Shown here: positions 1-22,255 of the stretch, in pieces | Numbering within the stretch: the stretch's first letter is position 1 | Layout: every line of letters begins with the position of its first letter | Assembly (NCBI GenBank): GCA_044892525.1 | Contig: CM097887.1 | Coordinates: forward strand, 42,966,001 to 43,030,000 | DNA: 64,000 nucleotides | Source of the DNA: Schmidtea polychroa | Taxonomy: Eukaryota | Direction of reading: 5' to 3' | The notes under the pieces: model-generated | What the model was told of the DNA's origin: nothing | The model's database searches: none | Seen by the model: only the letters and a program-made list of their open reading frames with translations | Made by a program: the position numbers and the translations under genes

Positions 1-152
1 TTTCGGTCTTCTATATATTTGTTTACTAGTCTCTCGTTTTCGTACTTCTCTTCCCGTAACTCGGCCTTTAACGTTTGTGTTTTTGTTGTTTCTGCCTCAA
101 TCTCTCCCTCTTCTACGTCGCTCGTAATTTCTATTATTTCCTCGATTTTCAT
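1..152 (-). CDS. Accessory ORF of the element, partial (MKIEEIIEITSDVEEGEIEAE...), runs off the window
   Basis: ATG at 150-152 and 50 open codons to the window edge. The upstream context (ttatagatATG) matches that of neighbouring accessory ORFs. Confidence 0.65.
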   Translation of the reverse strand, partial: MKIEEIIEITSDVEEGEIEAETTKTQTLKAELREEKYENERLVNKYIEDR

Positions 153-319
153 ATCTATAATATGTACAGTTAATGGTGCGCTATAGTGCGACTTATACAT
201 ATACATTTATATAAAATTTAATAGTTCGGGTTACAGTCCCTTGAATACTTTTATAATACTTTAATTTTTTTGTTTGGGATGTACGTCCCGATTTTTTTGT
301 TTTTATCTTTTATTCACCC

Positions 320-1375
320 TTATACGAAGGTTTCCTCCTGTCCCACATAACCTTCATCACTATCGACCGCGGGATGCAACTGTATCGCAATAGGGTCATA
401 GGGTAGGTAATATTGGGGGATTTGAGCTCTCAATTCATTAATTTCGTCTCTTAGAGCTCGAGTGATGTTCAATTCCTCGTCGAGCAGATAGGTGAGATAC
501 CTTGTCTCTTCGTCTTTCGCCTCTATTTGTTTGTCTAGGGCCTTGATTTTCTCGTCGCCCTTCCATTTTTCAATTTCTATTTCTAAGTTTTTAATATTTT
601 CGGTATACATTTTCCTCTCGTTTTCTAATTTTTTATTTTTTCCCGCTAGGACCATGTTTCTTTGTTCCAGCGATCCTTGTAATCCATTAAGGTCTCTTTT
701 CATCTCTTCGACCTGATTTACTAATTCCACAATCCGTCCTGCTTGTTGGGTTATCATCTCTTCCATTGCGGCGTTCTCGTGCTCTCTTATGTCGCATTTC
801 ATTGCCAAATGTCGCTCAAACTCCATGGCTTTTGTTTGCCAGGTTTGACTTCGGGCGGCGACCTTTCTCAACCGTTTCAATTCTTCCTTTATTATTAAAT
901 TCTCCTCCCATTTACCTTGTTCGCTTTCATATCCGAGTCTCATGGGCAATTCTTTCATCTCTTTTTTCATTTCACTGTTTTGTCTTTTCCATTTTCTCGC
1001 TTCTGCCACTAAGTGCATCATTTTCCTTCCTTCTATTTGCTTTTCCGCTTCGCGCTTGGTGTTCTCATCGGTAAGTCTCTTTCTCGCTTCCTGCACTAGC
1101 TGCTTTAAGTAGTGGCTGTGCGCTTCTTGGCGGGTATTTTCTAATGATGCCCATTTTGATGCTCTTTTACATGCTTCGGCTTCCTCTCTTAAATTGTGGA
1201 TTAGCCATTGATATTTACTGTTCTCATCTTCTCTAGCTTCTTCGATGTAGTTTCGGGTGAGGTTAGTTAGTTGGAACATTACTTTGTTCCATTTTTCGTT
1301 ATATTCTCTGGGAATTTGTGTCTTGTGGGTATTGGTTGGGGCTATCGTATTTTCGGTTATTCTCTCTTGTGTCAT
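320..1375 (-). CDS. Accessory long coiled-coil protein (351 aa)
   Basis: Intronless E/K/R-rich heptad-like sequence with the same A-rich strand bias as the polyprotein. Confidence 0.8.
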   Translation of the reverse strand: MTQERITENTIAPTNTHKTQIPREYNEKWNKVMFQLTNLTRNYIEEAREDENSKYQWLIHNLREEAEACKRASKWASLENTRQEAHSHYLKQLVQEARKRLTDENTKREAEKQIEGRKMMHLVAEARKWKRQNSEMKKEMKELPMRLGYESEQGKWEENLIIKEELKRLRKVAARSQTWQTKAMEFERHLAMKCDIREHENAAMEEMITQQAGRIVELVNQVEEMKRDLNGLQGSLEQRNMVLAGKNKKLENERKMYTENIKNLEIEIEKWKGDEKIKALDKQIEAKDEETRYLTYLLDEELNITRALRDEINELRAQIPQYYLPYDPIAIQLHPAVDSDEGYVGQEETFV

Positions 1376-1567
1376 TTCTAAATCATTGATATAGATTAAT
1401 CTCTTTTTTAAAAAAAAATTTATTTATTGGTTACTGGCCCGTTGGAAATTTTTCGCATCATTTTTGGGTTTTCGTATTTAGGGTTTTTCATACCATTATT
1501 ATATAATATTTTATTGGATATATACGCCGATATATACAGGTTATTATATACAACATTATTCGATGGG

Positions 1568-2956
1568 TTACTCCGTTCTACCCTTTCCTTCCCTTCGTAC
1601 TGTCATTTTTATATATATTGTGTCATTTCTCGTCATCTCTTCCATCTTTTGCTGCAAGATGAATGTAGGCGCTCCCGATGCTGCTCCTTCCTCATCAATA
1701 GGTCGCCGGTAACACAGCTGGGTTCCCGTCGTTTTAAAGCTTTGTTCGTGGACGCTTTGGTCATTCATCATTGCGATATCGATTTTTGCCTGGAATGGCC
1801 ATTCTATTATTTCGTCATATTCCCCTTTACATAATAGAAAAAATATCGAAAAATGTGTATTCAATCCGGTTCCATCTCCGTTGGGATATATCCTTATTTT
1901 CATCTTGTACCCATTTTTCCACGAATGGAATGCAGGACTTGTTATTCTTGTCTCTTCTCCGGTTTTTGCTTTTCGTATTCTTTCTTTTACTTCCGTTATT
2001 TTCCATATGTAGGGTGCTGTTGGTATTACTTCATTTAGATTTATTTCCCGTATTTTCTGGTGTAGCTCCTTGGCCTGATTATTACTGATTTCTATTCGGT
2101 TCATTTGCATCTTTATGTTTGCTCGGGCTTCTTCGAACGCTTCCCTTTCTTCTAGTAGTTCTTTGACTAACACTTTCAACGATGTTATCTCCATCTCCAT
2201 TTGTTTTACTTTCTCATCGCTTTCTTGTAACGCAGTCGACCACATTTCTGCGTGGGTTGAGGCATTTTCTACTAAATGATGTGGTAACTCTCCTCGGTGT
2301 TATAGTTTCTGACAGCCCCATTTACCTAGTACACATATCATCCTTTTCTTCTCACATTCTTTTAAGTGTTGGGCTATTTTTATTATTCTCCCTTCCTCGC
2401 ATCCGTTCGGGCATTCCCCACTGAACTCTGCACATACCTTTTCTTCTTGGACATTGTGATGTTTGATGGTGAGATTTTTCCACGTATCTATTTCTCCACA
2501 ATGTTCACATCTTTCTAGTCTCTCTTCACACTGGCTATGATGCTCTTTTTCTTCGCTTGCTCGAATGGTTTTATGGCACCTTTCACACTGGCCGATTCTA
2601 TACATACATTCCCCCATATGTTGCACTACCTTCCATATTACTCCTTTCCATTCGCATGGGGCATTTTTGCATCCCAGGTTGGTGTTTAACATGTCTTTCA
2701 CGGCGGCTTTATCCTCGTTAGTGTCTTCTAAACTCGATATTAGTGTCTCTTTGCACACCGGGCACCACTGCGGTCCATTCTTTATTGCTTCACTGATACA
2801 TTCCTTACATACTCTGCATCCACATAGGGTTTGGTGGGGTTCTTTTAGTAACTTTTCACATATTCCGCACATAACATGTTTGTGTATTCTGATCGTTGTA
2901 GATTTTCGGATTTGCTCGACAATCTCTCTGAACTCTTCTCTTTGTCGTTTATCCAT
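1568..2956 (-). pseudogene. TRAF: Element-borne intronless TRAF homologue (RING, TRAF zinc fingers, coiled coil, MATH/TRAF-C) with one in-frame TAA at 2300-2302
   Basis: RING CGICEKLLKEPHQTLCGCRVCKEC...CPVC; TRAF fingers CKNAPCEWKG...HMGEC and CERC...HHSQC; MATH YIWKI...SPAF...GYKMKIRIYPNGDG...THFSIFF...GEYDEIIEWPF. ORFs 2300..2956 and 1568..2245 share one frame (cag aaa cta TAA cac cga). Confidence 0.92.
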
Positions 2957-3041
2957 TCTATAATTATATGTACATATAGTTCTTATCGATACAGGTTCGA
3001 TATTTTATTTAAAATTATTTACATTTTAAGCTAGGTTTGGT

Positions 3042-3401
3042 TTAGGGTTCGGAAGAGTCGGCTTCGTGTCCGCTCTCCTCTCTATTCATTAGCCATTCCG
3101 ACCAGTCTTCTATTTCTGTCTGTTCTGCTTCCTCCATCATTCTTTCTAGTTCAATTTCCTGTCTATGGCTATATTGGGTTATCCTCTCCATTTCTCTTTG
3201 CATTTGTTCGATTTTTAACCTCTGGTCTTCAATTATCTTCAAATAACTAAATCCTCTGTTCATACTCTCGATTAGGTTTCTGTGCATCGTCAGTCCTTGT
3301 TCTTGCAAATTGGACACTAATTGTGCTAATACGGCACATTGTTGCTTCCATAATTCTTCAGTTACTGTATTGTGGTTCATTTCGTTATTTCCTTGATCCA
3401 T
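3042..3401 (-). CDS. Accessory small coiled-coil/acidic protein (119 aa from the ATG at 3401)
   Basis: ORF track 3042..3425 starts at TTG; the first ATG is at 3399-3401 (MDQGNNEM...). Confidence 0.7.
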   Translation of the reverse strand: MDQGNNEMNHNTVTEELWKQQCAVLAQLVSNLQEQGLTMHRNLIESMNRGFSYLKIIEDQRLKIEQMQREMERITQYSHRQEIELERMMEEAEQTEIEDWSEWLMNREESGHEADSSEP

Positions 3402-3561
3402 TCTTAATTTATATCCACTTTTCAACTCTTATGTAAATTTAATTTTATTTTATGATTCCCGTTATTGTATAATATTGATACCGCGCTTATATAAAGATAT
3501 AGTACTGTTATATACATAAGATATACTTACTTTTTACAATTATATACAGTCATATTCCTTT

Positions 3562-4116
3562 CTATATACGTGAGTTTGGAGGGCGCTGAACGTTCCAGGC
3601 CTCCACCCACTGTTCTTGTTTGATATCACTTGGTCGTTTCACTCGATGTTGGAAGTTTCTGATTCGGGTCATTTCTAGTTCTCCGCGATGTCGTTTGTCT
3701 TTAATTATTTTTATTGTTCCCCCCGTTATGATTAGGAATGCTCCTGTTATTATTATCCCACTGATCCACATCATCTGCTTCACGCTTATACTCTCTGGTT
3801 TTTCCTTGTTTGTTAATGTTGATATTGCTTCTGTACTTTTCTCGTTCCCTCTTTTGCCATTCCCTTTCATCATCTCTCGTATTCTTGCTATTTCCTCGTT
3901 CATACCCTCCTTTGCCATTTTTTGTATTTTTTCCATCTCTTCCTCCGAAACATAGTTGTCCTGAGCTTCCTCGCCAGTTTTCTTGTGCTTTCCTCCTTCG
4001 TCCTTTTCGTCGTGGTTTTTCCTTTTCTTTCCTCTTTTCCCCGGGTATCGTCGGCATTCTCTTTTTGATTCGTATATTCCTTCGGGGGCTGCTGCTGCGT
4101 CACATATTGATGGCAT
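3562..4116 (-). CDS. Membrane-anchor ORF overlapping the polyprotein end in the -1 frame; probably its true C-terminus
   Basis: TM helix MMWISGIIITGAFLIITGGTIKII followed by a basic tail. One extra A in the A5 run near 4016-4020 would fuse it to the polyprotein. Confidence 0.7.
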   Translation of the reverse strand: MPSICDAAAAPEGIYESKRECRRYPGKRGKKRKNHDEKDEGGKHKKTGEEAQDNYVSEEEMEKIQKMAKEGMNEEIARIREMMKGNGKRGNEKSTEAISTLTNKEKPESISVKQMMWISGIIITGAFLIITGGTIKIIKDKRHRGELEMTRIRNFQHRVKRPSDIKQEQWVEAWNVQRPPNSRI

Positions 4117-7100
4117 CTCTCACCCGGTCCTAATCTTGAAATACAGACTTTGTGCTCTTTTCTTGGTTGGAGCTGCGTTATTACTACTTCGCCACCTTTT
4201 CCGAGGTGTACCTCTTTTCCTTTAACGTTCGTTATTCTTTTCCCGTCTCGATTTCGGTATGCTTCTTGTATTCTTACTTCTGTTATTGGTTCTGTGTCCT
4301 CATTTATCAGTACTAGTTTCTGATACGCTCTAGACATGCATCTTCCTAGTATGCACCTTTCCTTTAAGTCCCATTCTTCCTTTAAATCCCACTGCTGCTC
4401 TTGTGCTTGCTTTTTCTTTTCTTGTTTTAGTTCATCCTCTTTGCTATCTTGATTCTCCGCTTCTTTGGTTTCTTTTATCGTTCTCGTCCCTCCATGAGCT
4501 GTTACTAACTCTATCATGGTAAGCATAATTATCATTAATATCATATTTGTCTCTATTTCTTTGTTAGTGAAAGGTAGGCATACCCTCTGTTTTCCATTAT
4601 TCGGTTTTTCCTCCTCTTTGGTCTTGGTTCCCGGGCTGTTTCCCTCTCTTTTCGTATCCGAATCCTTGTTTTCCGGTTTATCCTCCTCCGGTTCTCTTTT
4701 CTCTTTATCCTCCTTTCGGCCTTTTCCGTTATTGTCATCGTGTTTATCTCCCCCGCTGTCGTTTAAAATGTCGTCCTCGACATTTATATCGTTCAATAAT
4801 CTGCGATATGCTGTTAGCACTCTGTTTCTTGCTAATTTTGCTTCGAATTCAAACTCCTTTCTGCCCGTTGCAGCGTGTCTCTTTCTATTCCATTCTTTGA
4901 CTAATTCTCTTAATTGAATGCGACGATGTTTCCCAATTCTTTGTTGCTCGCTCTGATTTTGCGTGAATTTGAGGTCTTCTCTGTTTAGTACTATTAAAAT
5001 AATTTTTGGTGTCCCCCCTTTAGTTAATGTATTCTTTACCATCGCGTTTTCTCCGTTTTCGTAGAATTCGTTTATATTTATCGCATATTTATTACTTTGT
5101 GGTATTCTCCATGTTACTAATAATTTCATTGCTTCCAGATTTTTCCGTACCGTATTCCACTGAAATTGAGATGTGTTTTTGCATATATTTTCAACTTCTT
5201 CTTTTGTCGCATTTTTGCAAATGAATCTGATCATTTCTAAGTTTGGCTGTATGGTTGCCCAGTCCAAGGTGGAATTTCCTTCATTGGACCTTTCGTCTAG
5301 TCTCGATCCCGATTGATGTAGTATGTGGAGTGTTTTTGGGTGTATTTTCGTTATAGCTGCATACATCATGGCGGTTTCGCCTTGTTCATTTTTCGTGTTG
5401 GTTTCCTCGCCCATATCTCCAAGGATTCTCATGATCGTTATTGCTCTATTTTCTTTCGCTGCTAGTATTGCTTGTTGTAGGGGTGTTCTGGAATCCTTCG
5501 TTACCATCGTAAATGCTCGAGGCAAGAAGGTTTTGATTTTCCCGATATCTAAACCCGTGGTTTGATCTCTTGCGTATGTATGTACAGCTTTTATTATTTT
5601 TGACAATATTATTTCGTCTGACAACTCTAGCATTTCCTCAAAGAATACCTCTTTCGCTTTGCGTATTATTGCCTCCTGATCTATACTCATTGATTTTGTT
5701 TCGATGACGTTATTTGTGACCTTTTGGTTCGTTGTCAATTTTGGTTCCCTTGATTTCCCATACCTTATTTTCGTTTTCTTTCCGTTTGGATTATTGATTC
5801 GTTCCTCTGCTGTAAGTATTTGGATAATATCCAGGTAATTCTCGCGGATGTTATTCATTGTGTCCATCATATATAACACACTTACCGTTTCCCAATATTT
5901 ATTTCGTACTTGGTTAGTAAATTGGAATAGGGATTTTTCGAATGTGTCGATTCGCTTTTTTGCTAACTGTTCGTCTTTATGATTTGTGAATTTTATCCCT
6001 CGTTCTAGTAATTGATTCGGAATTTCGAATAAATGATGTCCTTTCATAGCTTCTCTCATCAGCGTGTTCTCTCCTCTCGTGAACGCTTCGTTTACGTTGA
6101 TCATATAATCGTTTTGAATTGGATTTCTCCATGTAATTAATATTCCGGTAATTGTTGTCAGTTTTTCTTTGATCGCTGTTAATAATCCATCATACATGTT
6201 TCCGACTTCCCGATTGTCCTCATATGATAGTAGTTCCATCAATGACGTGAACGCCTCGGTGCTTTTCCCTTCGATAGCATGATGTAGTGCATTTTTCCGC
6301 TCGTGGTCTTGTGTAGTTATTTTTGATCCAGTATCAAGTAATGCGGTTATAATGTCTTTGGTTTTTCCTGTGTTTGCTGCTATCATTAATGGTGTGTAAC
6401 CTTGGTTGTTTGTTTGTTCTGTTGATCGCTTGCAGTCGTGAAATGCTTCTATTGTTTCTAGTATTAGCTCGTTGTTACCTACTTTCATGAGTTTGTGTAA
6501 TGGTGTGTCTCCGTAATGATCTGTTATTGTAAATAATATCGGCCATTGGCTTTTGACTACTCGCAATAACGGATGTGTCCTCTCTCTGTTCGCATAATTT
6601 TCGATCATCGTCAATAATCCTCCTAATATTTCGAAATCTAATCGATCTTTTGCCCATCCAGGTATTTTAATTTTTACCTCTTTTACAATCTTTTCTGCTT
6701 CTGATGGTTGGATACCCAATCGTCCGGTGATCGGTTCTGCGAGTTGTTGCATCATGTTCATTCTGTATGTTTGCGAACGTGTGGTTAATGTTCGACCTTC
6801 TGGTTGACTGGTGGCGGTTTTTGGAATTGATTTACATCGTGCCACGTTCACGTATATTGGCCTGGTGAATGGATTATTTATCAATTTCACTCTTACATTG
6901 GTTTCGCCTACGAATAAGATCTCATATGGTCCTTTTCCGTTGCGTTGTAACTTTTTTGTGGTTCCTGGAATTAATTCCGGGGTTTCTATCATTACCCAAT
7001 CACCTGTTTGAAACGTATGTTGCTTCACGTTTTTCTTTCGATCGTGTAAATCTTTATAACTTTCCTGGTAGAACTTGATATTTAATCCCGCAATTTCCCA

Positions 7101-13100: not shown

Positions 13101-16100
13101 TATCCATTTTTCTCCTCTTTCGATCGTTGGTTGGGCTTCCTTTAGATCCCATACTATTTTATCCAATTTTTCTAATCGAACTTGCCCTTGTTCTTGCTTT
13201 AATTGTTCTTTGGTTTTGAACTCAGACTTTTCTCCTTGTTTCTTAGGTCTTCCTTTTGCCCGTTTTTCCATCATCGTTCCGGCTTCTCTGGTATTTTCGT
13301 AATTCGGATTTCTTTCGTTGTCCGTTCTGGGTAATGAGCTATCGTTATTTCTTAGCCACTCATTCCATTCGTCTATTATTTTATCGGTTTGACCTTCTGG
13401 TGTTACTTTCGTTGGTTCTCTTTGCTTCTGGAATTGTTCATCCGTTTCGGTTTCCGTAGTATTGTCGATGATTTCTTTGATGTTCAGTTTCGTTGGTTGT
13501 TGATAACTCGTTGATGGCTGGTTATTAGTCCACATTTCGGCTCCTGTCGGCCATCTCACTAATAGCGGTGATCTTTCTCCTGGTTCATCGTCACTATCTT
13601 CCAGGATTATCTCTTCAACTTCTTCAGTTTCATTAGATTTACTTGGAGCTTTGTTCGGACTTGGAGTACTCAAACTGCCTTTTGTTGGTTTAGTAATTTT
13701 ACTTTTCCTTTTTAACGGTTTCCCCAACGTTTCCGCCATTGTTAATACATTTGTCTCTTCCAATCTCATGGGTGTTATCCCGACGTCTGCATTATCGTCT
13801 AGTGATTTTCCGAACAGTTGTAGATGGAATGGAGTTTCATATGCTAATTTCTTTTTTAATTCTCTAATTTTTGTTGTTGGATGCACCTCTAGTTCTTCGA
13901 TGCTCTTGTCCGGATACTTGATTCGGATGTGATACCTCTCCTGAGTGTCTTGTGCCCATTCCTGATTTCTCCATTTTCGAATAATTTGTTCCAGCTGTTC
14001 TGGATACCATTCATTATATTGCCGGTATTCCTCTATTGCCTTTGCCATTTCTCTCAGATTGTGGATATTCTCTGATGTCTTTAGGATGATATTAGCCAAC
14101 GCTACCACCTGGCGTTTTTGATTTTTCGCTCCCATTGCTAAAATATCGCCTAATTGTTTATATCTTTCTTTCTCTTCTCGCTCTCTTGCTTCAATTGCTT
14201 CCTCGCCGTCCATATCGGCATATTCTCGTTCCTTTTTCCTCATTGCATGAATATGTCTCGCTTCATTTTCGCTTTCTGATGTGACATCCGTCTCGCCTTC
14301 GTCATCTGATGTCTGTTCCCTTGCTTCCTCTTCATATTCTGGAGGTTCCTCTTCTTCTTCCTCCGATTCACTTTCTGTCTCACCAATGTCTGTTTCTACG
14401 AAGATCCCTTTCCTGATTTCCCATTCCTTATTTTCTGCATTCCACACTCTTTCCCATGGGGTTCGTCTGCAGGATCTGGTATTTAATTTCGTGATTTTTC
14501 CTTGTAGCTCCTTTTCTTTTAACCATTGTTGGTGGATTTCAATTATTTCTGTAGATTTTTGATATAACGTTTTCATCCGGTCTCGTATTTCTTTTTGATA
14601 GGTTACATCTCTTGTTCGGAATTCATCCATTGGTACTATCCTGATTATCTGATGATTGTCCCACATACCCATTTCGCTTAACGAGGTGTCGTCCTCCGCT
14701 CGTAATATTATTTTGTCGTACATCATGACTACATCATCCACCATACCATCACTACTTTCGCTACGTACCTTTTCCGTTATCTCTTGGTTTATTTTTGATA
14801 CCAAGTCATCTACTGTACTCTGATTGCTCATTTTTATTCGTCGTTTTTCTTCGTTCGGTAACCATATGGTTATTTCCAACCTCTGTGGCTGGGTTTCTTT
14901 TAACCTTCCATATTTGTGGATCAAATTTATGGTTCTCCAATCACTCATCCGGAGCATTTCTGTATCTCGCAATCGGCTCATTAGTTCGTACATGGCTGGG
15001 GCTCGTCTGGTGATGAGTAAATCCCAGTTGTCTTCTACTTGTTCTTGAATTTGTTTGATCAGCTTATCCAGGTTTCGTCTCAGAGTACATTGTTTTATTT
15101 GTTCTAATTTCAATTTGATATTAAAATCATATTCTGCCTTGGCATCTTTAGCCCAATCGTAAAGGTTGGCTGGTTGTTTTTCTTTGTGCAACTTTAGTAT
15201 TTGCGTTTCTCCTGGCCATATTAGTGCATCTACTAAGTGCATATCTGGTTTGATCTGTTCTCCTTGGTATTGATACAGATATTCTTTCTTTCTCGAACTT
15301 CCCAAATGTTCTCGTATCCAATCGAAAAGTTCGTCGGTGACTGTATTTTTTATCCACATTCTTTCAAGTCCTCTACTCGTTCCGATTTTTATTACATACC
15401 GCGTGGTATCGGCCTGCTTCATTTTTTCCATATACTTTTTTATAATTGATTTTTCCTCGTTTGGTATTAGATCTTTCTCGTTTCTTTCCAATTTCATCAC
15501 TTTTTGCACGAATCGCCTGAATGGAATTACGTCGATGAACTCTTGGTTCCTCACTACTACTGGGAGTATTTCGGCTACCTGTTTTATCGCTTCCTCCCTT
15601 GCTTTTCTCAACTTTATCTCGATATCTTCGTCTTCACTTTCACTGGTTATCTCGTTTTCGCTTTCTTCCTCTTTGATTTCCCCTTTTGGAGGTTCGCTTA
15701 TTTCATTCAGCTGTAGTATTTCTCCACCCAAACTACTTACATAGTCTTCTTCTTCGTCTGACGATGCTACATCTTTTATCCTTTTCATCATATTGATTTG
15801 CAAGTTTCTCATCCTTGGTACTCTCTTTAGTTTCTTTCTTTCGAATATTGTTGTTTCTTCTGATTCTAATTCTTGTAGCATTTGGTGGTTTAGTTGACTG
15901 GTTTGTTCCTTGCTCTTGTTATTTTCATCTTCTGTCGCGGCTTTCGCTTTATTATGTTCTTTTTCGATTTTATCTTTTATCTTTTTCCAGAATATTTTCT
16001 GAATTCTCTGGTTTCCTTTTAAAATCGTGGTTGAATTCTCTGTTTTCATTTCCGTTGTTGTTTCTGTTACCTTTTCTGGTTCAGTCATGGGTACTACCCT

Positions 16101-17396
16101 TGGGTTTTTTCCGTAATTGTAGCAATACTGGCTTTTCATGTCTTTTACTAACTTCATCATATTAATTCGCAATGGTTGTTCTTGTCGTTGTTGGTTGCGT
16201 TCTTGTTTTATCCTCTCTTCCTCGGCCTGTAGTCTTTGCCATTCTTGTACATGTTGATGCACTTCGTAATTGTTGAGATTTTCGGTACTTCTCATCATAC
16301 GTATATTCTGGGTTTGTTGTGGTGCTGATTCGGGTCTTGGTCTCATCATTTGTTGCATCATCTGTTTCATCTGCGAAATTTCCTGCATAACGTTCATTTG
16401 TTTTCCTTCGTTAGGGTTACTTTGTCGTTGCGGATTCGCTATATAATTATTATTTCGCTGTGGTGGTCGTTGTTGTTGACCCCTTTCTCGGCAATCTCTG
16501 GAGATGTGACCTGGCTGACCACAGTTAAAACAACCTCGCAATTGGCATACATTTTCGGTATGTCCACGCCGTCCGCAACGATTACAATTTGAATTTCTAT
16601 AACAATCTCTGTCCCAGTGTCCTGGTTTACCGCATGTTCGGCACTGCTTGTTATCGTTCATATTTCGTCGATTATTGAAATTGTTCTCATTATTCGGGTT
16701 GTTACGATTACCATTATTCCCATTTGATCGTCCTTGTGGTGGTTTGAAAATTTGGTGCGCTCCTGGTATAAATTGATTCATTTTCGGTTCTTGATGGTTG
16801 TTATCTCCGTTATCCGCTTTCGCTATTGCTGTCGCTATCCTTCCCTCCTCTTGCATAATATTCATTTGAGCTGGAAGGTGGAGCTCGCATCTTGTAGCCC
16901 AATCTATGGCTTCCTCTAATGTTTTGCACATTTGACACCCTACTGAGGCTCTTACTTCTTCTCGGCGTAATCCCTCTATGAAATAACCGATCAAATTTTC
17001 TTCTGGTAATTTCCCATTCATTGCTTTCTTTGCCAATCTCCGCAATTCGCTGGCATATAACGTAATGGATTCATTTGCCCTTTGTTTCCTATTTGCTAGT
17101 TCGCCGAGTGCTTGATTTATTGGTTTGCTAGCTCCGAAAGTTTTCTTCAGGAATGTTTTGATATCTTCCCACTTCTCTAATTTCGTATCTCTCTCTTTAG
17201 CTTCTAAATATACTTCTAATGCACTATCGCACAAAAACAACGGCATCCTTTTACTAATTGCTTCGGGTGTCCATCCACACACAGTGATATAAACTTCAAA
17301 ATTAGTTATGAACGTTGCTAGCTTGTTTGCATTTCCATTGAACGGTTCTCCTCGGAACTTTTCTTTATACTCGTCGGTTTTTACGACATTCGTCAT
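3900..17396 (-). CDS. gag-pol: 4498-aa Gag-UBLx3-Bcl2-Env-PR-dUTPase-like-RT-RH-IN-ANK-FN3 polyprotein
   Basis: 13.5-kb open frame with a Retrotrans_gag-like N-terminus, 3 CCHC knuckles, MIDTGA, YIDDLL, ATDAS, H-H-C-C zinc motif, D-D-E triad and GPY motif. Confidence 0.97.
   Translation of the reverse strand: [4498 protein letters not shown]
5100..6540 (-). other. Two ankyrin-repeat modules C-terminal to integrase
   Basis: [64 protein letters not shown]. Confidence 0.9.
6765..8100 (-). other. Integrase with HHCC zinc motif, DDE core and GPY/F module
   Basis: [10 protein letters not shown]...CLTC; [36 protein letters not shown]. Confidence 0.96.
8160..9400 (-). other. Reverse transcriptase and RNase H
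   Basis: [51 protein letters not shown], YIDD (8937-8948); FLLATDASG...[11 protein letters not shown]...TDHQPL...NADCMSR. Confidence 0.97.
9870..10230 (-). other. Aspartic protease
   Basis: [19 protein letters not shown] (DTG at 10158-10166) and CIIGTDLM. Confidence 0.95.
10250..12605 (-). other. env: Env-like class III fusion glycoprotein (chuvirus/gB-like) embedded between Gag and protease
   Basis: Signal peptide [23 protein letters not shown], 14 ectodomain cysteines, motifs [26 protein letters not shown] and [13 protein letters not shown], then [30 protein letters not shown]. Confidence 0.85.
12720..13170 (-). other. Bcl-2-like domain within the polyprotein
   Basis: [19 protein letters not shown] matches the BH2 pattern (Bcl-xL YLNDHLEPWIQENGGWDTF), with a gap-free alignment back to the BH1 position. 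Confidence 0.7.
13730..15405 (-). other. Three ubiquitin-like (beta-grasp) domains (~15185-15405, ~14625-14885, ~13730-13940), each preceded by a helical block
   Basis: UBL3 [29 protein letters not shown]...[10 protein letters not shown] aligns with ubiquitin IFVKT...LEVEPSDTIENVKAKI...LIFAGKQLED. UBL1 and UBL2 keep the same pattern more loosely. Confidence 0.7.
16491..17396 (-). other. gag: Gag: capsid domain plus three CX2CX4HX4C zinc knuckles (16491-16643)
   Basis: EPFNG...FITNFE...W...[10 protein letters not shown]...[12 protein letters not shown]...[17 protein letters not shown]...FIEGL; knuckles [28 protein letters not shown] and [14 protein letters not shown]. Confidence 0.95.
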
Positions 17397-18773
17397 GATT
17401 GGTGTTCTAGGTTCGTCTGTTTCTTTTAAATTGTCTAACGATGTGACTAAACTTTGGGCTGATAATTCCTCGGTTGACGTTGCTAAACTATTAGTGATAT
17501 CGGACAGACTTTCTCTACTTCGAGATCGACTAGGGGTATATCCGAGATTTTCTTGGTCAAATATGGGTACTTGATTGGTTCTTCTTGCTCCTTGTGATAT
17601 TCCTCGTTGATGTTTAATAGATCGTCCTCTTTTGAGTTGTTGTAATTCGTCTCCTGAAAATAATACGTCTCCTGGCTTACTTGAAGATCTAAGATTGGGT
17701 TTATCCGTGATTCCTTTCTTACGCTTCTTGGTAATTAGCGGCTATTGAATTGGACGAGTTCGGTTCTGATTGTGCTTCCTTCGATAAATATTCTGTATGA
17801 ATCTGCTACTGAGATCCTGAGGAGATTTACTAATCCTTGGCAGATGGCTGCTAATACTATGAGGTTGAATATATCGATGATTCGTTCGAAGTTGGAGATG
17901 TCGCTATCTGTATCTTCTTCCGTTCTGGAGTCTTCCGGTTGCTGTGTCTCTCGGTGCGGGTTCTGAATGGATTTATCCTTGGTTGATTGTCGATTTCTTC
18001 GAATTCCTTTTGTGCAGGTTCTGGATTGTCTTGGTTGACTGGATTGGCTTGATATCTAAAATGAAAAAATGATCTCGTGTTGCATTTGCTTACACGACTT
18101 CATCATTCTTTCAACAACATTTGAACACAGACACCTTTTAGGTTCTGTTTATGCTTCCCCTATTTTTTTTTTTTTTTTTATGCAATTACTTCCGCGGGTT
18201 ATAATCTCCCATCAGCCCGTATTTTCCGTCGATTTTAAATTATCTATATGGGGTAGTAACAATTATCTATAAAGTCGTAATAATTATCTATTCGTTATCA
18301 ATTATAGTAAAAATAGGTCGTTGTCGGTCTCTGCTTATTACCCCCCTTCGTTTTCTTATTCCTTTGCGCTGTTGTCGCTGTTTTACTTTTCATATTTACT
18401 ATTATCCCACTCGGTTCTACTCTGGAACCGATAAAAATACATTTTCCCGGTTTACCCAAAAAAAAATTCCGTAGAGTTTCTCTACTTCACTGGGATCCCT
18501 TTAATTAGCTAGTTACTTTCTTCTTCTACTCATTATCTCCATTTCACCTATTCTTTATTTTCTCATTATTTCTTTAATTCATTTTCTTCTTCTCCTTCCT
18601 TTTTCATTATAATTTTATTATCTTTTCCCCGAGCTCGTTTATTTCCTCTCTAAACTCAAATTTTCGTAATTATATTCAATTTGTTTCTAGCTAGCTTTAA
18701 TATTCCCTTTCTCTATTAATTTTAAATATTATCTCATTGTAGCTTAACTGCTATTTCTCATTTTTCTAGGCCT

Positions 18774-19146
18774 TTACGACTGGCTGGCACTATTCCACAG
18801 CTCAATCTTCTTCCTTCTGATCGGTTGGACTATTCAACAACTCGATCTTACGACTGGCTGGCACTATTCAACAGCTCAATCTTCTTCCTTCTGATCGGTT
18901 GGACTATTCAACAACTCGATCTTACGACTGGCTGGCACTATTCAACAGCTCAATCTTCTTCCTTCTGATCGGTTGGACTATTCAACAACTCGATCTTACG
19001 ACTGGCTGGCACTATTCAACAGCTCAATCTTCTTCCTTCTGATCGGTTGGACTATTCAACAACTCGATCTTACGACTGGCTGGCACTATTCAACAGCTCA
19101 ATCTTCTTCCTTCTGATCGGTTGGACTATTCAACAACTCGATCTTA
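18774..19146. repeat. Tandem array: 5 copies of a 74-bp unit in the element leader
   Basis: Units start at 18774, 18848, 18922, 18996 and 19070, with a single variant base in copy 1. Each unit is a diverged dimer (ggctggcactattcaacagctcaatctt / ggttggactattcaacaactcgatctt). Confidence 0.98.
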
Positions 19147-19701
19147 ATATTCCCCGCTCTGCATGCTTCTACTTCTCTTTTCTTCTTTTACCCTAGATTA
19201 CCATTTTCTCTGTCTACTTTTAATTTGTCGACTTAATCTTTACCGCTTGAGAGTGTTTCCCCTTTCCCCCCTTGCTCGAAACGCACGACGATAGCGATGA
19301 TCCGTTTCCACATTGGTATGGTGATCAGTCATGCCGCAGAAACTTCTCATCATATGCGATGGTACCCCGCCCTACGCTTCTTACTTGGGTTGATCAGTTA
19401 TCCCCTCCCAACGGGTTCTTGCAATAAAACGTACCGCCCGAAGGTGGCTCGGTTTGTACCCCTGCAGCCTATATTGGGACTAATTCCACGTTAGTTTTAT
19501 TCTTCTCCATTCGATCTCATAACCAAAGATATAATTAAAAGAGATAAAATATCTAATTCATAACAACAAAAAAATTTTTATTTATTCTGAGACTAAAATT
19601 AAACATTAAAGTTATTTCACACTTAAAAGTACATATATTCGTATTCAAAGGTCTTTTAACAATTTAGTGCGCATATACATCACTGCATCTGGTTAGTCGT
19701 T

Positions 19702-20187
19702 TTAATCACCGTAATAAACCATATGGGTTTCTTTTATCCCATTTTTACATATTGCACATCGTTTCAGATCTTTCACGCACTCTTCACAATGACTGAGGTG
19801 TCCACAAGGTAAGAATAGTATGCGTATAGGGCGAAGATTGCAAGACAGACAGGTTCGCAATTTGGTGAGTTTCTCTTGTATCTTTTGTTCGATTGCCTCT
19901 GATATTGTATGTAGTTGATCTTTTATTCGCTCGTATTCTAGATTTAGGGCCGGGTTTTTTAGTCGTTTTAGGTACCATTGGTATACTGTTTCTTGATTTA
20001 TCTTTTCATCTGAGTGGCTTAAACCTGCGGCCAATAACACGTGATTAGGTACGACTGGTGTATGTCCGATTGCTTGGAGTAGAATGCTGTTGATTCGCTT
20101 TCTTTTTTGTATGAGTGTTCTAATAGGGTCGTTTTCTATATTAATGAAATTGACTAATTGTTGTATCTGTTCTGCGAATTCCGTCAT
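19702..20187 (-). CDS. Accessory protein with C-terminal IAP/MDM2-type C3HC4 RING (161 aa), located between PBS and gag
   Basis: CLSCNLRPIRILFLPCGHLSHCEECVKDLKRCAICKNGIKETHMVY at the extreme C-terminus. A strong acceptor-like tract precedes the ATG. Confidence 0.88.
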   Translation of the reverse strand: MTEFAEQIQQLVNFINIENDPIRTLIQKRKRINSILLQAIGHTPVVPNHVLLAAGLSHSDEKINQETVYQWYLKRLKNPALNLEYERIKDQLHTISEAIEQKIQEKLTKLRTCLSCNLRPIRILFLPCGHLSHCEECVKDLKRCAICKNGIKETHMVYYGD

Positions 20188-20459
20188 GTCTATTGGGAAA
20201 AGGGAAAAAAAAAATTTTTTTAAATAATATACAGCTAATTAATGGTTATTTCATCAAACATTTTTCTTTTTAAATCGTTATAATTTATTTTGTTTTTATT
20301 CTATTTCCCTATTATTTACTTTATTTATATCTTTAATTCTATTATTTTCTAATCGTGATTTATAATAAGATTCGATAGGCATTAGTCAATTTACATTCGC
20401 CCACTAATTGAAATCGATAATCCCGGTGAATTCACATTATTCGACAGAAATTCCATAAT

Positions 20460-20477
20460 ATCCCTGCTGAGCCCCCA
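20460..20477 (-). promoter_or_regulatory. Primer-binding site, tRNA-Pro-like
   Basis: Minus strand TGGGGGCTCAGCAGGGAT matches 15/18 positions of the MLV tRNA-Pro PBS TGGGGGCTCGTCCGGGAT. Confidence 0.75.
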
Positions 20478-22255
20478 AAAATTATGCTGGGGTAGTGCTT
20501 GGTTGACTCTGCTCAATCTACGTCCTTGTCTAGGGGGTGCGTGCCCATATCATTACGCTACATACGCCCGTGTCAACCCGGAGCAGGACCCCGCACAACT
20601 TGCCCTCCAACATAGCACCCGCGAATTGCTTCACGTTGGAAATGTGCTATGTCGGCGAGACTCCAGTAAGCAGGTGAGCCCCTACCTTAGGACTACTCCT
20701 TACTGAGGCCTCGACTTCCCTTTTCTGACGGCCGATGGAAGGACTTACGTCTGTTTACCTCATCAGATTCTCCCTCTACCCTGACCCATTATTCGGCACA
20801 AAATTGACCACTGCCTCTCGAACTCAAACTTTACTCTCGCTTTGCGAACGCTACGCTGAACCTTTGTCACAGCTAGTTAGATTTAAACAACAACAAAAAT
20901 TTAACCAAATATTTCTTTATTTTATTATCATGATACATTAGAGAATTATACACTACATAACGAGTACACTTGGTGGAGAATAGATTAAGAAGAAAAAGAG
21001 TCAAGATAGTTTATTTGTCCATTCGCACCCTGCACGGTTGCATTGTGTTGCGGCCATCACTTCTCCCACCCCGCATCCGCCAATAGCTCCTCTAGATCAA
21101 AAAACTCGGAGGCATTCTCCTCCCAAGTCACACCAGCGGCAGATATGATTCGCCCTGGGATTCCTACGGTCAGATCGATCGTTACGGGTGGATCATTCGA
21201 AGCACTTAGGTGGTTGGCAGATAGTTCTCGTTGTTTGACCATTGCTCGTTCACGTTGGCGCTTTTTACGCTCCGCTCTGGACAATTGGCGGCGCTTAGGT
21301 TTTGAGGGGTTGGCAGACAAGATTGCCGAGGACGTCGTGGCTGAATGCAATACCTTGCCAGTGCCGGTAGTAGGTACGTCCGATGGCCTGGGGGAGAGGT
21401 CGGCCTCCACACATTCCTGACAAGATCTTTTCGACAAAGGTGGCGAACTAAATGAAGGTTCATGGTGAACGGGGAAGACATTGTCCGCTTCTTTAATCGG
21501 AATACTAACAATCCTTCGGGTTGTAGCGGCTTGAACGTAAACTTTATGTAGAGCTTCGGACTGCTCTTTGATTAGGCTACGCTGAGCTCTACTTTCGCTT
21601 ATCAAAGCATCGCGACAATGCTCACTGCGGTACAATTTCTTTTGAACTTCCTTCATTTGTACTGGGCTAAACCATGTACTTTCCAGATCGTCGATCTTCT
21701 TTTTATATCGACCGACCTGGGCCTGTAATTCTCGGATTACGGTATTTTTATCCGAGCAGGAGAAGCAGGGTTTGATGGGCGATTTCGTGCTTGGCAACAT
21801 CTTTTGATAGCTGTAATGAAGAAAGAATAATGGAGATAAGACGAAAATTGGCTAGCTCTACTAATCTATCAGAGTAGCGTAATTATTTATTAAGGCTCAT
21901 AAATTCCCTACATCACATTCATGGGTTGAAATGACCGACAAGAAGAAAACGGAATGACTGTTAGCGAAACTTCCTGTTGATCGATATTACATCCGTAAAG
22001 TAATTCATAGGTTTACGGGTTAACAAATTAATTCTCCCCCCCCCCCCTTTTGCCCAACATGATAATTTGATTGCGGATTAGGAAAACTTGTCAATACATG
22101 AGCGTGACCAGATTCGACTTTACTATCAGCAAAACAATTCAGACAGGTGCAATACATCGGGATAATAAATTAATTAAAAGATTTGAGTTTATTCGCGATT
22201 ATAATACTCTAATTTGAGTTAATAGTAAATGCGTGCGATTACAAAAAACTTTACA
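20478..22255 (-). repeat. Putative 5' LTR (boundaries unverified)
   Basis: Lies immediately upstream of the PBS; AATAAA at ~20921-20926 (minus); candidate TG starts at 22025, 22243 or 22255. No second LTR is in the window for comparison. Confidence 0.45.
21057..21800 (-). CDS. 247-aa ORF inside the presumed LTR: CxxC, coiled coil, basic NLS-like stretch, acidic C-terminus
   Basis: Open frame preceded by acceptor-like ttctttcttcattacag; contains KPKRRQLSRAERKKRQRER and EFFDLEELLADAGWEK. Confidence 0.65.
   Translation of the reverse strand: MLPSTKSPIKPCFSCSDKNTVIRELQAQVGRYKKKIDDLESTWFSPVQMKEVQKKLYRSEHCRDALISESRAQRSLIKEQSEALHKVYVQAATTRRIVSIPIKEADNVFPVHHEPSFSSPPLSKRSCQECVEADLSPRPSDVPTTGTGKVLHSATTSSAILSANPSKPKRRQLSRAERKKRQRERAMVKQRELSANHLSASNDPPVTIDLTVGIPGRIISAAGVTWEENASEFFDLEELLADAGWEK

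What the first reader, a model, noticed from the sequence alone, without database searches (positions are those of the whole stretch)
1..22255. Giant enveloped Gypsy element carrying a death-receptor/NF-kB/apoptosis modulation toolkit: a candidate complex invertebrate retrovirus
Seen: one element combines intact PR/RT/RH/IN with a class III fusion glycoprotein, a Bcl-2-like domain, three UBLs, ankyrin modules, a full TRAF, an IAP-type RING and a type I membrane protein. Established: TRAF, IAP RINGs, Bcl-2 folds and ankyrin proteins act in TNF/TLR-NF-kB and cell-death signalling, and poxviruses and baculoviruses use this same set as host modulators. Giant (>30 kb) Gypsy 'Burro' elements are known from the planarian Schmidtea mediterranea, so relatives may already be described. 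Inference: an infectious or recently infectious retroelement that suppresses host cell death and innate signalling; this cargo combination is not typical of Metaviridae.
Basis: partly seen in the sequence, partly recalled or inferred. Interest (0 to 1): 0.96.

Follow-up and report, generated by a model that had tools for sequence, protein, structure and literature searches.

The report
Burro-type giant enveloped Gypsy element copy
The window holds most of one copy of a giant retrovirus-like "Burro"-type Gypsy element, probably in a planarian genome, whose single 4,498-codon gene also encodes a viral fusion glycoprotein and ubiquitin, TRAF and ankyrin modules; it is real and striking, but this kind of element has already been published.

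Summary
Window 1 to about 20-22 kb is the larger part of a giant Ty3/Gypsy element on the minus strand, cut at its 3' side by the window edge. One uninterrupted 4,498-codon ORF encodes Gag with three CCHC knuckles, ubiquitin-like domains, a mononegavirus/chuvirus-type fusion glycoprotein with signal peptide and membrane anchor, PR, RT, RNase H, IN and two duplicated ankyrin modules. Small ORFs on the same strand add a complete TRAF (RING, TRAF fingers, coiled coil, MATH; one in-frame stop), an IAP-type RING without BIR, and coiled-coil and membrane proteins.

Confirmed: PR/RT/RH/IN, env, ankyrins, TRAF, IAP-type RING, two of three UBLs. Not confirmed: the Bcl-2-like fold, the first UBL, a "type I membrane protein", the 22255 boundary, and any LTR.

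This architecture is published for Burro/GYPSM1 of Schmidtea mediterranea (Jurka 2007; Grohme 2018; Arkhipova & Yushenova 2019, PMC6431247). That includes env in frame between gag and pol, the apoptosis/ubiquitin cargo, and the provirus/"tinkerer" idea. This copy differs mainly in where the TRAF sits.

Infectivity and host modulation remain inference. Verdict: real and intact-looking, but already known.

The parts
1..22255 (-). Visible part of the element as the finding delimits it. The 3' side is cut by the window edge and the 5' bound is unverified; it could lie anywhere from about 20350 to about 23700.
   Evidence: G+C is 0.37-0.43 over 1-22000, with strong A-richness on the minus strand up to about 20000. 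The flank has G+C 0.24-0.33. No LTR pair lies in the window.
3900..17396 (-). ORF1: a 4,498-codon polyprotein with no stop or frameshift.
16407..17396 (-). Gag: capsid-like Retrotrans_gag domain plus three CCHC zinc knuckles (aa 1-330).
   Evidence: Pfam PF03732 E=3e-9 and PF00098 E=7e-10; three knuckles at aa 252-302.
15162..15401 (-). Candidate UBL1 (aa 666-745); unconfirmed.
   Evidence: Conserved with P0002 (34% identity over the region). The only other support is a beta-beta-alpha start in a model of pLDDT below 50.
14622..14882 (-). UBL2 (aa 839-925): a probable ubiquitin-fold domain.
   Evidence: Sub-threshold PI3K_rbd (0.0095) and UN_NPL4 (0.096) hits. Foldseek hits of the low-confidence model are nearly all ubiquitin, NEDD8, ISG15, ubiquilin or SUMO.
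13722..13937 (-). UBL3 (aa 1154-1225): a ubiquitin-like domain, conserved in the P0001 family.
   Evidence: Profile against PDB: Get5/Mdy2 UBL at E=4e-5, plus ubiquitin-like proteins. Pfam ubiquitin E=0.004; Rad60-SLD E=0.003 in the homologue. BLASTP to P0001 E=2e-5.
12702..13169 (-).
   Evidence: No Pfam or PDB hit. Model pLDDT 49, all helices, no meaningful Foldseek match. The literature reports a BCL2-like motif at this position in Burro.
10617..12605 (-). Env (aa 1598-2260): signal-like segment, 548-aa ectodomain with 14 Cys, membrane anchor (aa about 2170-2196) and cytoplasmic tail, in frame between gag and pol.
   Evidence: PF24664 Monjiviricetes_fusion E=1e-69; 39-41% identity to the P0001 env; hydropathy.
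9933..10208 (-). Aspartic protease.
   Evidence: PF00077 E=3e-9; D-T-G motif.
8793..9269 (-). Reverse transcriptase.
   Evidence: PF00078 E=1e-35; Y-I-D-D motif.
8217..8606 (-). RNase H.
   Evidence: PF17917 E=6e-39 and PF17919 E=4e-37.
7326..7895 (-). Integrase (H2C2 finger plus catalytic core).
   Evidence: PF17921 E=4e-20 and PF00665 E=2e-12.
5967..6629 (-). Ankyrin module 1 (aa 3590-3810).
   Evidence: Ank_2, Ank_5 and Ank hits; paralogue of module 2.
4944..5609 (-). Ankyrin module 2 (aa 3930-4151).
   Evidence: Ank_4 E=1e-9; 24% identity over 223 aa to module 1, E=2e-14.
3903..4556 (-). C-terminal tail of ORF1: a signal-peptide-like hydrophobic segment, then a Cys-containing and then basic region; no family match.
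   Evidence: Hydropathy 2.04 at aa 4284-4300; no significant Pfam hit.
3562..4116 (-). 184-aa ORF in another frame, overlapping the end of ORF1, with one TM segment. It may be a separate gene or a shifted continuation; I cannot tell which.
   Evidence: no Pfam hit.
3042..3425 (-). 127-aa coiled-coil ORF with no family match.
1568..2956 (-). TRAF-like gene: RING, TRAF zinc fingers, coiled coil and MATH. It is 462 same-frame codons, broken once by an in-frame stop.
   Evidence: It is 34-35% identical to the TRAF fingers and MATH that sit in frame inside relatives' polyproteins. Its base composition equals that of ORF1.
320..1375 (-). 351-aa coiled-coil ORF; no family passes threshold.
   Evidence: element-type composition.
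19702..20187 (-). 161-aa ORF upstream of gag with a C-terminal IAP-type RING and no BIR.
   Evidence: PF13920 E=6e-11; cIAP1/2 and XIAP RING E=6e-11; A-rich like ORF1; no relatives in the protein collection.
18774..19146 (.). Tandem repeat in the leader: 74-nt unit, 5 copies at 99% identity, with degenerate copies out to 18700-19220.
   Evidence: Tandem repeats are drawn in published Burro maps.
21057..21800 (-). 247-aa orphan ORF in the GC-richer block. Whether it belongs to the element is uncertain; it may lie in a long LTR or outside the element.
   Evidence: No Pfam hit and no homologues. Its composition is unlike ORF1.
20470..20800 (-). GC-rich (0.46-0.54) non-coding block, mildly structured as RNA. 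A TGG-led stretch that could be a primer-binding site follows it; this is unverified.
   Evidence: z=-2.45; no Rfam match.

Best explanation
This is a young, largely intact genomic copy of a Burro-type giant Ty3/Gypsy endogenous retrovirus-like element. It has the GAG-ENV-POL order with everything in one reading frame. The host is an AT-rich genome, most likely a dugesiid planarian such as Schmidtea. The window cuts off its 3' end.

SHOWN. One 4,498-codon ORF carries Gag-NC, at least two ubiquitin-fold domains, a mononegavirus/chuvirus-family fusion glycoprotein with its own signal-like segment and membrane anchor, PR, RT, RNase H, IN and two ankyrin modules. A TRAF gene, an IAP-type RING ORF and several coiled-coil or TM ORFs flank it on the same strand with the same A-rich composition. 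TRAF fingers and MATH are family cargo that sits inside the polyprotein in relatives.

INFERRED MECHANISM.
1. The genomic RNA is translated into one polyprotein.
2. The internal signal segment sends the Env ectodomain into the ER and the anchor stops transfer. Gag-UBL parts and PR-RT-IN-ankyrin parts therefore stay cytosolic on either side of the membrane, much as in a flavivirus-type polyprotein.
3. Signal peptidase and the element's protease cut the chain. A recurring Asn-Met-Met motif, found once just after IN, is a candidate protease site.
4. Capsids bud with Env.
5. The ubiquitin-like, TRAF, RING and ankyrin modules engage the host ubiquitin and TRAF-dependent signalling or death pathways, or serve budding.
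6. The flanking small ORFs would need spliced or internally initiated messages.

None of the inferred steps was tested.
For: Domain calls.

Intact ORF and catalytic motifs.

Env signal and anchor.

Same architecture in the only database relative: the P0001 family has 4,026-4,029 aa, pol 43% and env 39-41% identical, a conserved UBL before env, and its own 3' accessory ORFs.

TRAF as family cargo: P0002 carries MATH, and P0003 carries TRAF fingers, in frame after the same polyprotein segment. They are 34-35% identical to the 3' TRAF gene here.

Composition: TRAF, the RING ORF and the 3' ORFs match ORF1, not the flank.

Asn-Met-Met motif: 4 observed against 0.37 expected.

Literature: Burro/GYPSM1 has the same layout, including in-frame env, three CCHC knuckles, tandem repeats and accessory ORFs that alternate with polyprotein subdomains (PMC6431247). 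Platyhelminth GAG-ENV-POL elements carry gB-type class III ENV (PMC13524379). Chuvirus glycoproteins are class III by structure prediction. BURRO1 is transcribed and PIWI-controlled (PMC8532177).
Against: No LTR, PBS, PPT or target-site duplication could be shown. The 3' end is outside the window and no other genomic copy was reachable.

I could not compare the element with a named Burro sequence. The host species is inferred only from composition and the literature.

The Bcl-2-like fold, a dUTPase-like region between PR and RT, and BIR are all reported for Burro1. None was detected here.

The TRAF gene has one in-frame stop. The 247-aa upstream ORF has a foreign composition and no relatives.

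The class III fold of Env rests on a Pfam family and on papers, not on a structure made here (searches found no PDB sequence match).

All functional steps are inference.
Confidence: 0.85

Rival explanations
1. Only ORF1 is the element. The flanking small ORFs (TRAF, IAP-type RING, 247-aa ORF, coiled-coil ORFs) are host genes, pseudogenes or debris of other elements that happen to lie beside it.
For: No LTRs could be found to bracket them. The 247-aa ORF has a different composition and no relatives. The RING ORF has no relatives in the collection. The TRAF has a stop.
Against: All are on the element's strand, are intronless and follow one another closely. TRAF, the RING ORF and the 3' ORFs share ORF1's unusual A-rich composition, not the flank's. 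TRAF fingers and MATH occur in frame inside relatives' polyproteins. Published Burro relatives carry MATH_TRAF in an accessory ORF. The P0001 family also has 3' accessory ORFs.
Confidence: 0.12
2. The element is a dead fossil: an endogenous copy with no recent activity, whose cargo domains are decaying relics without function.
For: There is one stop in the TRAF gene. The end of ORF1 overlaps an ORF in another frame, which could be a shift. No BIR and no detectable dUTPase or Bcl-2 signal was found, unlike the Burro1 description.
Against: A 13.5-kb frame without a single stop in an AT-rich genome argues for recent insertion or continuing selection. The catalytic motifs are intact. The leader tandem repeat copies are 99% identical. 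BURRO1 is described as abundant, active and transcribed (PMC8532177).
Confidence: 0.2
3. The ubiquitin-like, RING and TRAF modules serve the element's own assembly and budding rather than immune or death modulation. They would supply ubiquitin signals and E3 recruitment for ESCRT-type release.
For: The UBLs lie in the Gag-proximal half and are conserved even in the P0001 family, which lacks TRAF and ankyrin. A single PPxY motif lies in the acidic linker after UBL2. From general retrovirology, retroviral budding depends on ubiquitin and on late domains.
Against: The PPxY count is not significant (1 observed against 0.23 expected). TRAF MATH, an IAP-type RING and ankyrins are classic signalling modules. 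Nothing here separates the two roles, and they are not exclusive.
Confidence: 0.25
4. The locus is an assembly chimera of several repeats, not one element.
For: Giant repeats are hard to assemble in planarian genomes (PMC11410931). Composition changes near 20350.
Against: Gag through ankyrin is one continuous frame. The same order is found in an independent relative and in the literature. The N runs lie far away, at 47-50 kb.
Confidence: 0.03

Closest known systems
[quoted passage not shown] 2018; Arkhipova & Yushenova 2019, PMC6431247)
   Same: A giant single ORF1 with Gag plus three CCHC knuckles, a Ubi/SUMO-like domain, env in frame between gag and pol with mononegavirus-glycoprotein homology, PR-RT-RH-IN, ankyrin repeats, TRAF-type MATH, coiled-coil ('Smc') stretches, tandem repeats and an AT-rich host.
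   Different: ORF1 is 4,498 aa here against 4,873 aa. MATH is not in ORF1; it belongs to a complete 3' TRAF gene with RING and fingers. An acidic linker sits where relatives have the TRAF insert. There is an IAP-type RING but no BIR. No dUTPase-like or BCL2-like signal was detectable with my tools. Sequence identity to the named entries could not be measured. The likely Burro-type fragments P0002 and P0003 are only 34-54% identical.
Burro-like element of Dugesia (Girardia) tigrina (PMC6431247)
   Same: MATH_TRAF is encoded by an accessory ORF rather than inside ORF1, and the layout is otherwise the same.
   Different: There the accessory ORF is upstream, ORF1 is 5,140 aa with midasin homology, and there are two CCHC knuckles. 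Here the TRAF is downstream and there are three knuckles.
GAG-ENV-POL 'errantiviruses' with HSV gB-type class III ENV in Platyhelminthes, Nematoda and Bryozoa (PMC13524379)
   Same: A Ty3/Gypsy backbone, with env placed between gag and pol and belonging to the class III fusogen group.
   Different: That survey does not describe giant size or signalling cargo. Whether its flatworm elements include this family is unknown, because no supplement is held.
P0001 family (ENA ERZ2271605, ERZ2271892 and others; Logan ERR3573160; contigs of 14.5-18.4 kb)
   Same: A single gag, UBL, env, PR-RT-RH-IN ORF of about 4,030 aa with pol 43% and env 39-41% identical, followed by 3' accessory ORFs.
   Different: Its cargo is an extra aspartic protease after IN and RNase_T-type exonuclease ORFs. 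It has no ankyrin, TRAF or RING by Pfam. Its host is unknown.
Mosquito BEL/Pao elements with captured chuvirus glycoprotein (PMC7642597)
   Same: A retrotransposon that acquired a Jingchuvirales/Monjiviricetes-type glycoprotein.
   Different: It belongs to a different superfamily, its env is a separate ORF, and it has no signalling cargo.
Host-modulator sets of large DNA viruses (poxvirus ankyrin and Bcl-2-like proteins, baculovirus IAPs)
   Same: The same protein families appear as viral cargo. This is an analogy from general knowledge only.
   Different: There is no homology of the elements themselves. Here no BIR and no confirmed Bcl-2 fold were found, and function is untested.

Membership tests
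Ty3/Gypsy (Metaviridae) LTR retroelement | pol domain order PR-RT-RNase H-IN | tested here: met
   Pfam positions along ORF1.
Ty3/Gypsy (Metaviridae) LTR retroelement | Gag with capsid-like domain and CCHC nucleocapsid knuckles | tested here: met
   PF03732 and PF00098; three knuckles.
Ty3/Gypsy (Metaviridae) LTR retroelement | Two long terminal repeats, a PBS after the 5' LTR, a PPT before the 3' LTR, and a target-site duplication | tested here: inconclusive
   No repeat pair lies in the window because the 3' end is cut. The terminal inverted-repeat search gave only chance-level pairs. The PBS candidate is unverified.
Burro/GYPSM1 giant Gypsy elements | Giant ORF1 of more than 4,000 aa joining gag, accessory domains and pol in one frame | tested here: met
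   4,498 codons without a stop.
Burro/GYPSM1 giant Gypsy elements | env homologous to mononegavirus fusion glycoproteins, in frame between gag and pol | tested here: met
   PF24664 E=1e-69 at aa about 1600-2207, upstream of PR at aa 2397.
Burro/GYPSM1 giant Gypsy elements | Ubi2/SUMO-like domain upstream of env | tested here: met
   UBL3 profile hits UBL structures at E=4e-5. Rad60-SLD E=0.003 in the homologue.
Burro/GYPSM1 giant Gypsy elements | BCL2-like motif just before env | tested here: inconclusive
   A helical region lies at the right place, but it has no Pfam, PDB or Foldseek support.
Burro/GYPSM1 giant Gypsy elements | MATH_TRAF_C cargo, in ORF1 or in an accessory ORF | tested here: met
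   The 3' TRAF gene, homologous to the in-ORF1 MATH of P0002.
Burro/GYPSM1 giant Gypsy elements | Ankyrin repeats after IN | tested here: met
Burro/GYPSM1 giant Gypsy elements | BIR motif | tested here: not met
   No BIR by Pfam in any ORF and no BIR-type Cys/His pattern in six frames of 1-24000. Only an IAP-type RING is present.
Burro/GYPSM1 giant Gypsy elements | dUTPase-like region between PR and RT | tested here: not met
   Zero Pfam families at E<=10 for aa 2490-2710. The published call came from HHpred, which is more sensitive.
Burro/GYPSM1 giant Gypsy elements | Sequence relatedness to the named consensus entries (RT/IN clade); dugesiid planarian host | not testable with these tools
   No Burro or Repbase sequence and no planarian assembly is reachable. 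Indirect evidence only: UniParc fragments P0002 and P0003, and host A+T above 70%.
Class III viral fusion glycoprotein | Homology to a class III family; signal peptide, ectodomain with conserved cysteines, C-terminal anchor | tested here: met
   PF24664; signal-like segment and anchor, 14 Cys. Chuvirus and flatworm-element glycoproteins are class III in papers.
Class III viral fusion glycoprotein | The class III fold itself (gB/G/gp64-like domains, internal fusion loops) | not tested
No PDB sequence match was found, even with a profile.
TRAF | RING, TRAF zinc fingers, coiled coil and C-terminal MATH (TRAF-C) | tested here: met
   The gene has one in-frame stop in this copy. The fourth RING ligand is Cys rather than His.
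IAP | At least one BIR domain | tested here: not met
   The 161-aa ORF has only the C-terminal RING. It is an IAP-type RING protein, not an IAP.
Bcl-2 family | Eight-helix bundle with BH motifs | tested here: inconclusive
   The region is all-helical, but no match reached significance.

The most novel reading that the evidence does not exclude
This may be a distinct Burro lineage, not one of the described Burro-1 to -4. In it a complete TRAF E3 ligase and an IAP-type RING protein would have become separately expressed accessory genes around a membrane-spanning Gag-Env-Pol polyprotein. That would make it an invertebrate counterpart of a 'complex' retrovirus, with cargo modules that shuttle between polyprotein and accessory-gene positions.
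Probability: 0.2. Interest if true: 0.65.

Novelty: already known. Interest (0 to 1): 0.35.

Why it matters
Burro-type elements are the largest known LTR retroelements and fill a sizeable share of planarian genomes. They are transcribed in differentiated tissues and held down by PIWI. They are also the clearest case of a retroelement that carries an RNA-virus fusion glycoprotein together with ubiquitin, TRAF, RING and ankyrin modules.

A copy with an unbroken 13.5-kb reading frame is a good specimen for descriptive work. It can show how such a polyprotein is laid across membranes and cut. It can also show how host signalling domains are captured and moved within an element.

The idea itself, an enveloped provirus that tinkers with apoptosis and ubiquitination, is already in print. 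The finding therefore adds a specimen and a few details: a 3' full-length TRAF gene, the TRAF position varying among relatives, a duplicated ankyrin module, and a candidate protease-site motif. It does not add a new kind of thing.

Tried and rejected
1. Other genomic copies. None of the window's ORFs is in the protein collection. P0002 and P0003 have no contig on record. Env-based scans of viral and metagenome contigs found nothing. Copies, LTRs and TSD therefore could not be compared.

2. LTR in the window. Repeat search and blastn of the left end against 17.4-26 kb found nothing. The TG...CA inverted-terminal search gave at best a 10-nt pair at about 22473/20427, which is about what chance gives. 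I rejected it as evidence.

3. Bcl-2. Pfam at E<=1, PDB phmmer at E<=10, a single-sequence AlphaFold model (pLDDT 49), and Foldseek against PDB and BFVD all gave nothing significant. An adintovirus Bcl2 appeared only at rank 28, E=1.7.

4. Env against PDB by sequence and by a two-sequence profile gave no match.

5. phmmer of aa 640-1600 against 1.84 billion representatives gave only two hits. No deep alignment could be built for structure prediction.

6. Rfam and tRNA scans of 1-24000 and of the whole window were empty. GC-rich leader block A is mildly structured (z=-2.45) and block B is not (z=0.06).

7. Homologue searches for the RING ORF and the 247-aa ORF were empty.

8. Late-domain motifs. 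One PPxY was found and is not significant.

9. The Grohme et al. 2018 paper is not held. The supplements of PMC13524379 are not held.

Slip to report. My first notebook entry lists the bounds of the two ORF pieces of the TRAF-like gene. I wrote it before I recognised them as one gene, and those bounds in effect bracket its stop. In this report the gene is given as one part.

Alignment tools printed consensus lines on their own.

Full report
WHAT IS THERE

The window has 38-42% G+C and a very strong excess of T over A on the plus strand from position 1 to about 20 kb. The remaining 40 kb has 24-33% G+C without such skew. The skewed part is therefore read on the minus strand.

It holds one open reading frame, 3900-17396, of 4,498 codons with no stop. 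Pfam places these domains along it, in order: a retrotransposon Gag domain; CCHC zinc knuckles; a 'Monjiviricetes_fusion' viral fusion glycoprotein (PF24664, E=1e-69); a retroviral aspartic protease; reverse transcriptase (E=1e-35); RNase H (E=6e-39); the integrase zinc finger and core; and ankyrin repeats in two places. There are three knuckles.

The PR D-T-G and RT Y-I-D-D motifs are present. The two ankyrin modules are an internal duplication: 24% identity over 223 residues, E=2e-14.

The glycoprotein part begins with a moderately hydrophobic signal-like segment (aa about 1598-1618). It has a 548-residue ectodomain with 14 cysteines and a strong membrane anchor at aa about 2170-2196. A tail of roughly 200 residues then leads to the protease.

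Gag, Env and Pol are therefore one frame, in the order GAG-ENV-POL.

SMALL ORFS ON THE SAME STRAND

Downstream of ORF1 lie four features:
- A 184-aa ORF in another frame that overlaps the end of ORF1 and has one transmembrane segment.
- A 127-aa coiled-coil ORF.
- A TRAF-like gene.
- A 351-aa coiled-coil ORF.

The TRAF-like gene (1568-2956) has 462 codons in a single frame, interrupted once by an in-frame stop. I searched its two pieces apart. One matches the RING-zinc-finger structures of TRAF5 and TRAF6 (E=1e-14). The other matches the coiled-coil and TRAF-C structures of TRAF2, 3, 1 and 5 (E=6e-30; Pfam MATH E=2e-26).

Upstream of gag lie, in order towards gag:
- A 247-aa orphan ORF (21057-21800).
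- A GC-rich non-coding block.
- A 161-aa ORF (19702-20187). Its last 50 residues are an IAP-type RING (PF13920 E=6e-11; cIAP1/2 and XIAP RING E=6e-11).
- A second GC-rich block.
- A 74-nt tandem repeat of five 99%-identical copies.
- A 1.3-kb A-rich leader.

No BIR is present anywhere in 1-24000.

PR/RT/RH/IN, the fusion glycoprotein, the ankyrin modules, the TRAF and the IAP-type RING are confirmed, with the qualifications above.

The three ubiquitin-like domains fare differently:
- UBL3 (aa 1154-1225) is supported. It is conserved in the P0001 family. A three-sequence profile hits the UBL of Get5/Mdy2 at E=4e-5, followed by ubiquitin variants, ubiquilin, ISG15 and NEDD8. Pfam gives ubiquitin E=0.004, and Rad60-SLD E=0.003 for the homologue.
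- UBL2 (aa 839-925) has only sub-threshold beta-grasp hits (PI3K_rbd, UN_NPL4) and a low-confidence model (mean pLDDT 42; 55-66 in that part). Foldseek hits for that model are nevertheless almost all ubiquitin-fold proteins (E about 2-8e-3, target TM-score mostly 0.5-0.68). I count it as probable.
- UBL1 has no support.

The 'Bcl-2-like' region (aa 1410-1565) is all-helical in the model. It has no Pfam hit at E<=1 and no PDB hit at E<=10. Its model has pLDDT 49, and Foldseek finds nothing meaningful in PDB or BFVD. The call is unconfirmed here.

No ORF other than Env has both a signal peptide and a later membrane anchor. The signal-like segment at the end of ORF1 and the only other anchor lie in different frames.

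DO THE FLANKING GENES BELONG TO THE ELEMENT?

The window cuts the element at its 3' side. No LTR pair, PBS or target duplication can be shown. No other genomic copy could be reached: the window's proteins are not in the protein collection, and scans of viral and metagenome contigs found nothing.

Three lines of indirect evidence remain.

First, composition. The TRAF gene (A 0.41, C 0.16, G 0.24, T 0.18), the RING ORF and the other 3' ORFs match ORF1 (0.41/0.17/0.22/0.20). They do not match the flank (0.37/0.14/0.14/0.34). The 247-aa ORF does not match ORF1.

Second, relatives. A search of aa 640-1600 against 1.84 billion representative proteins returned only two proteins. Both are UniParc entries.
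- P0002 aligns with the UBL1-UBL2 region at 34% identity. It then carries a MATH domain in frame, and then realigns with the segment before UBL3.
- P0003 aligns with aa 944-1011 at 54% identity and then carries TRAF zinc fingers in frame.
- The 3' TRAF gene here is 35% identical to those fingers (E=6e-31) and 34% identical to that MATH (E=3e-31).

TRAF is therefore cargo of the family, placed inside the polyprotein in some members and in a separate gene here. Here an acidic linker (aa 985-1052) sits where relatives have the insert.

For the RING ORF only strand, position and composition speak. For the 247-aa ORF nothing does. It may lie in a long 5' LTR or outside the element. The 22255 boundary is not supported by any test. 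Element-type composition ends near 20350, and a GC-richer block runs to about 23700.

WHAT IS KNOWN

Arkhipova and Yushenova (PMC6431247) summarise Jurka (2007) and Grohme et al. (2018) and add HHpred analyses. Burro1/GYPSM1 of Schmidtea mediterranea is more than 30 kb long. Its 4,873-aa ORF1 holds:
- Gag and three CCHC knuckles.
- MATH_TRAF_C, a Ubi2/SUMO-like domain and a BCL2-like motif.
- An env 'in-frame between gag and pol' with hits to mononegavirus fusion glycoproteins.
- PR, a dUTPase-like region, RT, RH, IN, ankyrin repeats and BIR.

Burro-2 to -4 share these motifs. A Dugesia tigrina relative encodes MATH_TRAF in an accessory ORF. The authors propose that Burro elements are integrated proviruses that meddle with apoptosis and ubiquitination.

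A 2026 survey finds GAG-ENV-POL Ty3/Gypsy elements with gB-type class III ENV in Platyhelminthes, Nematoda and Bryozoa (PMC13524379). Chuvirus glycoproteins are class III by structure prediction. BURRO1 is transcribed, enriched in gut and repressed by SMEDWI-2 (PMC8532177). Planarian genomes have more than 70% A+T (PMC11410931), as does the flank here.

The finding's element thus fits the published family feature by feature. It differs in four respects:
- ORF1 is shorter.
- The TRAF is a full-length 3' gene.
- An IAP-type RING occurs without BIR.
- I detected no dUTPase-like or BCL2-like signal.

Whether it is one of Burro-2 to -4 could not be tested, because no named Burro sequence is reachable.

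A WIDER RELATIVE

The only full-length database relative is the P0001 family. It has twenty near-identical proteins of 4,026-4,029 aa on 14.5-18.4-kb contigs from ENA and Logan assemblies.

It shares the single gag-UBL-env-PR-RT-RH-IN frame, with pol 43% and env 39-41% identical. Its cargo is different: an extra aspartic protease after IN and 3' exonuclease ORFs.

So the frame plan and a UBL before env are older than the TRAF and ankyrin cargo.

HOW IT MOST LIKELY WORKS (INFERENCE)

The polyprotein is translated from the genomic RNA. The internal signal segment inserts the Env ectodomain into the ER and the anchor stops transfer. Gag-UBL parts and PR-RT-IN-ankyrin parts thus remain cytosolic.

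Signal peptidase and the element's protease then separate the products. The tripeptide Asn-Met-Met occurs four times against 0.37 expected (P about 0.001). Three occurrences share a similar context: two after the nucleocapsid region and one just after integrase. I propose these as protease sites.

The cargo modules would act on ubiquitin- and TRAF-dependent pathways, or on budding. The flanking ORFs would need spliced or internally initiated messages. None of this was tested.

VERDICT

It is the published reading of a published family, however, and its functional core is untested. Novelty: already known; at most a new member if it falls outside Burro-1 to -4.

Noticed in passing
window 24872-26629 (+): hAT-type transposon remnant in two ORFs: zf-BED, DUF4371 and the hAT dimerisation domain.
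   Followed up: partly
window 36073-38064 (+): Intact 663-aa ORF in AT-rich DNA. Its only Pfam signal is a sub-threshold HAP2-GCS1 gamete-fusogen hit (E=1e-3, 17.9 bits against a cutoff of 27.4). Unexplained.
   Followed up: no
window 50960-51730 (+): pogo/Tigger-type DDE_1 transposase split over adjoining ORFs.
   Followed up: no
window about 60408-60578 (-), within the GC-richer stretch 60-62 kb: Integrase-core fragment, 40% identical to the element's IN (tblastn E=2e-8). It is debris of another Gypsy-type element.
   Followed up: no
window 48344-48472 and 63405-63532: Inverted repeat arms of about 130 nt (84-91% complementary), 15 kb apart. They may be termini of a DNA transposon. N runs at 47279-47489 and 49469-49612 were left alone.
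   Followed up: no
L001, L002, L003 (ENA ERZ2271605, ERZ2271892; Logan ERR3573160): A family of about 4,030-aa gag-UBL-env-pol single-ORF elements with 3' RNase_T-type exonuclease ORFs. It was recovered as 14.5-18.4-kb contigs in about 20 assemblies, once as the longest contig of its assembly (NODE_1). No terminal repeats were found in the longest contig. Host and nature (DNA or transcript) are unknown.
   Followed up: partly
window 20470-20800 and 19270-19510 (-): Two GC-rich non-coding blocks in the region upstream of gag. The first folds better than shuffles (z=-2.45) and the second does not (z=0.06). Neither matches Rfam.
   Followed up: partly
ORF1 aa 985-1052 (window about 14241-14444, -): Acidic linker with a single PPxY motif, at the spot where relatives carry the TRAF insert. 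The motif count is not significant.
   Followed up: partly
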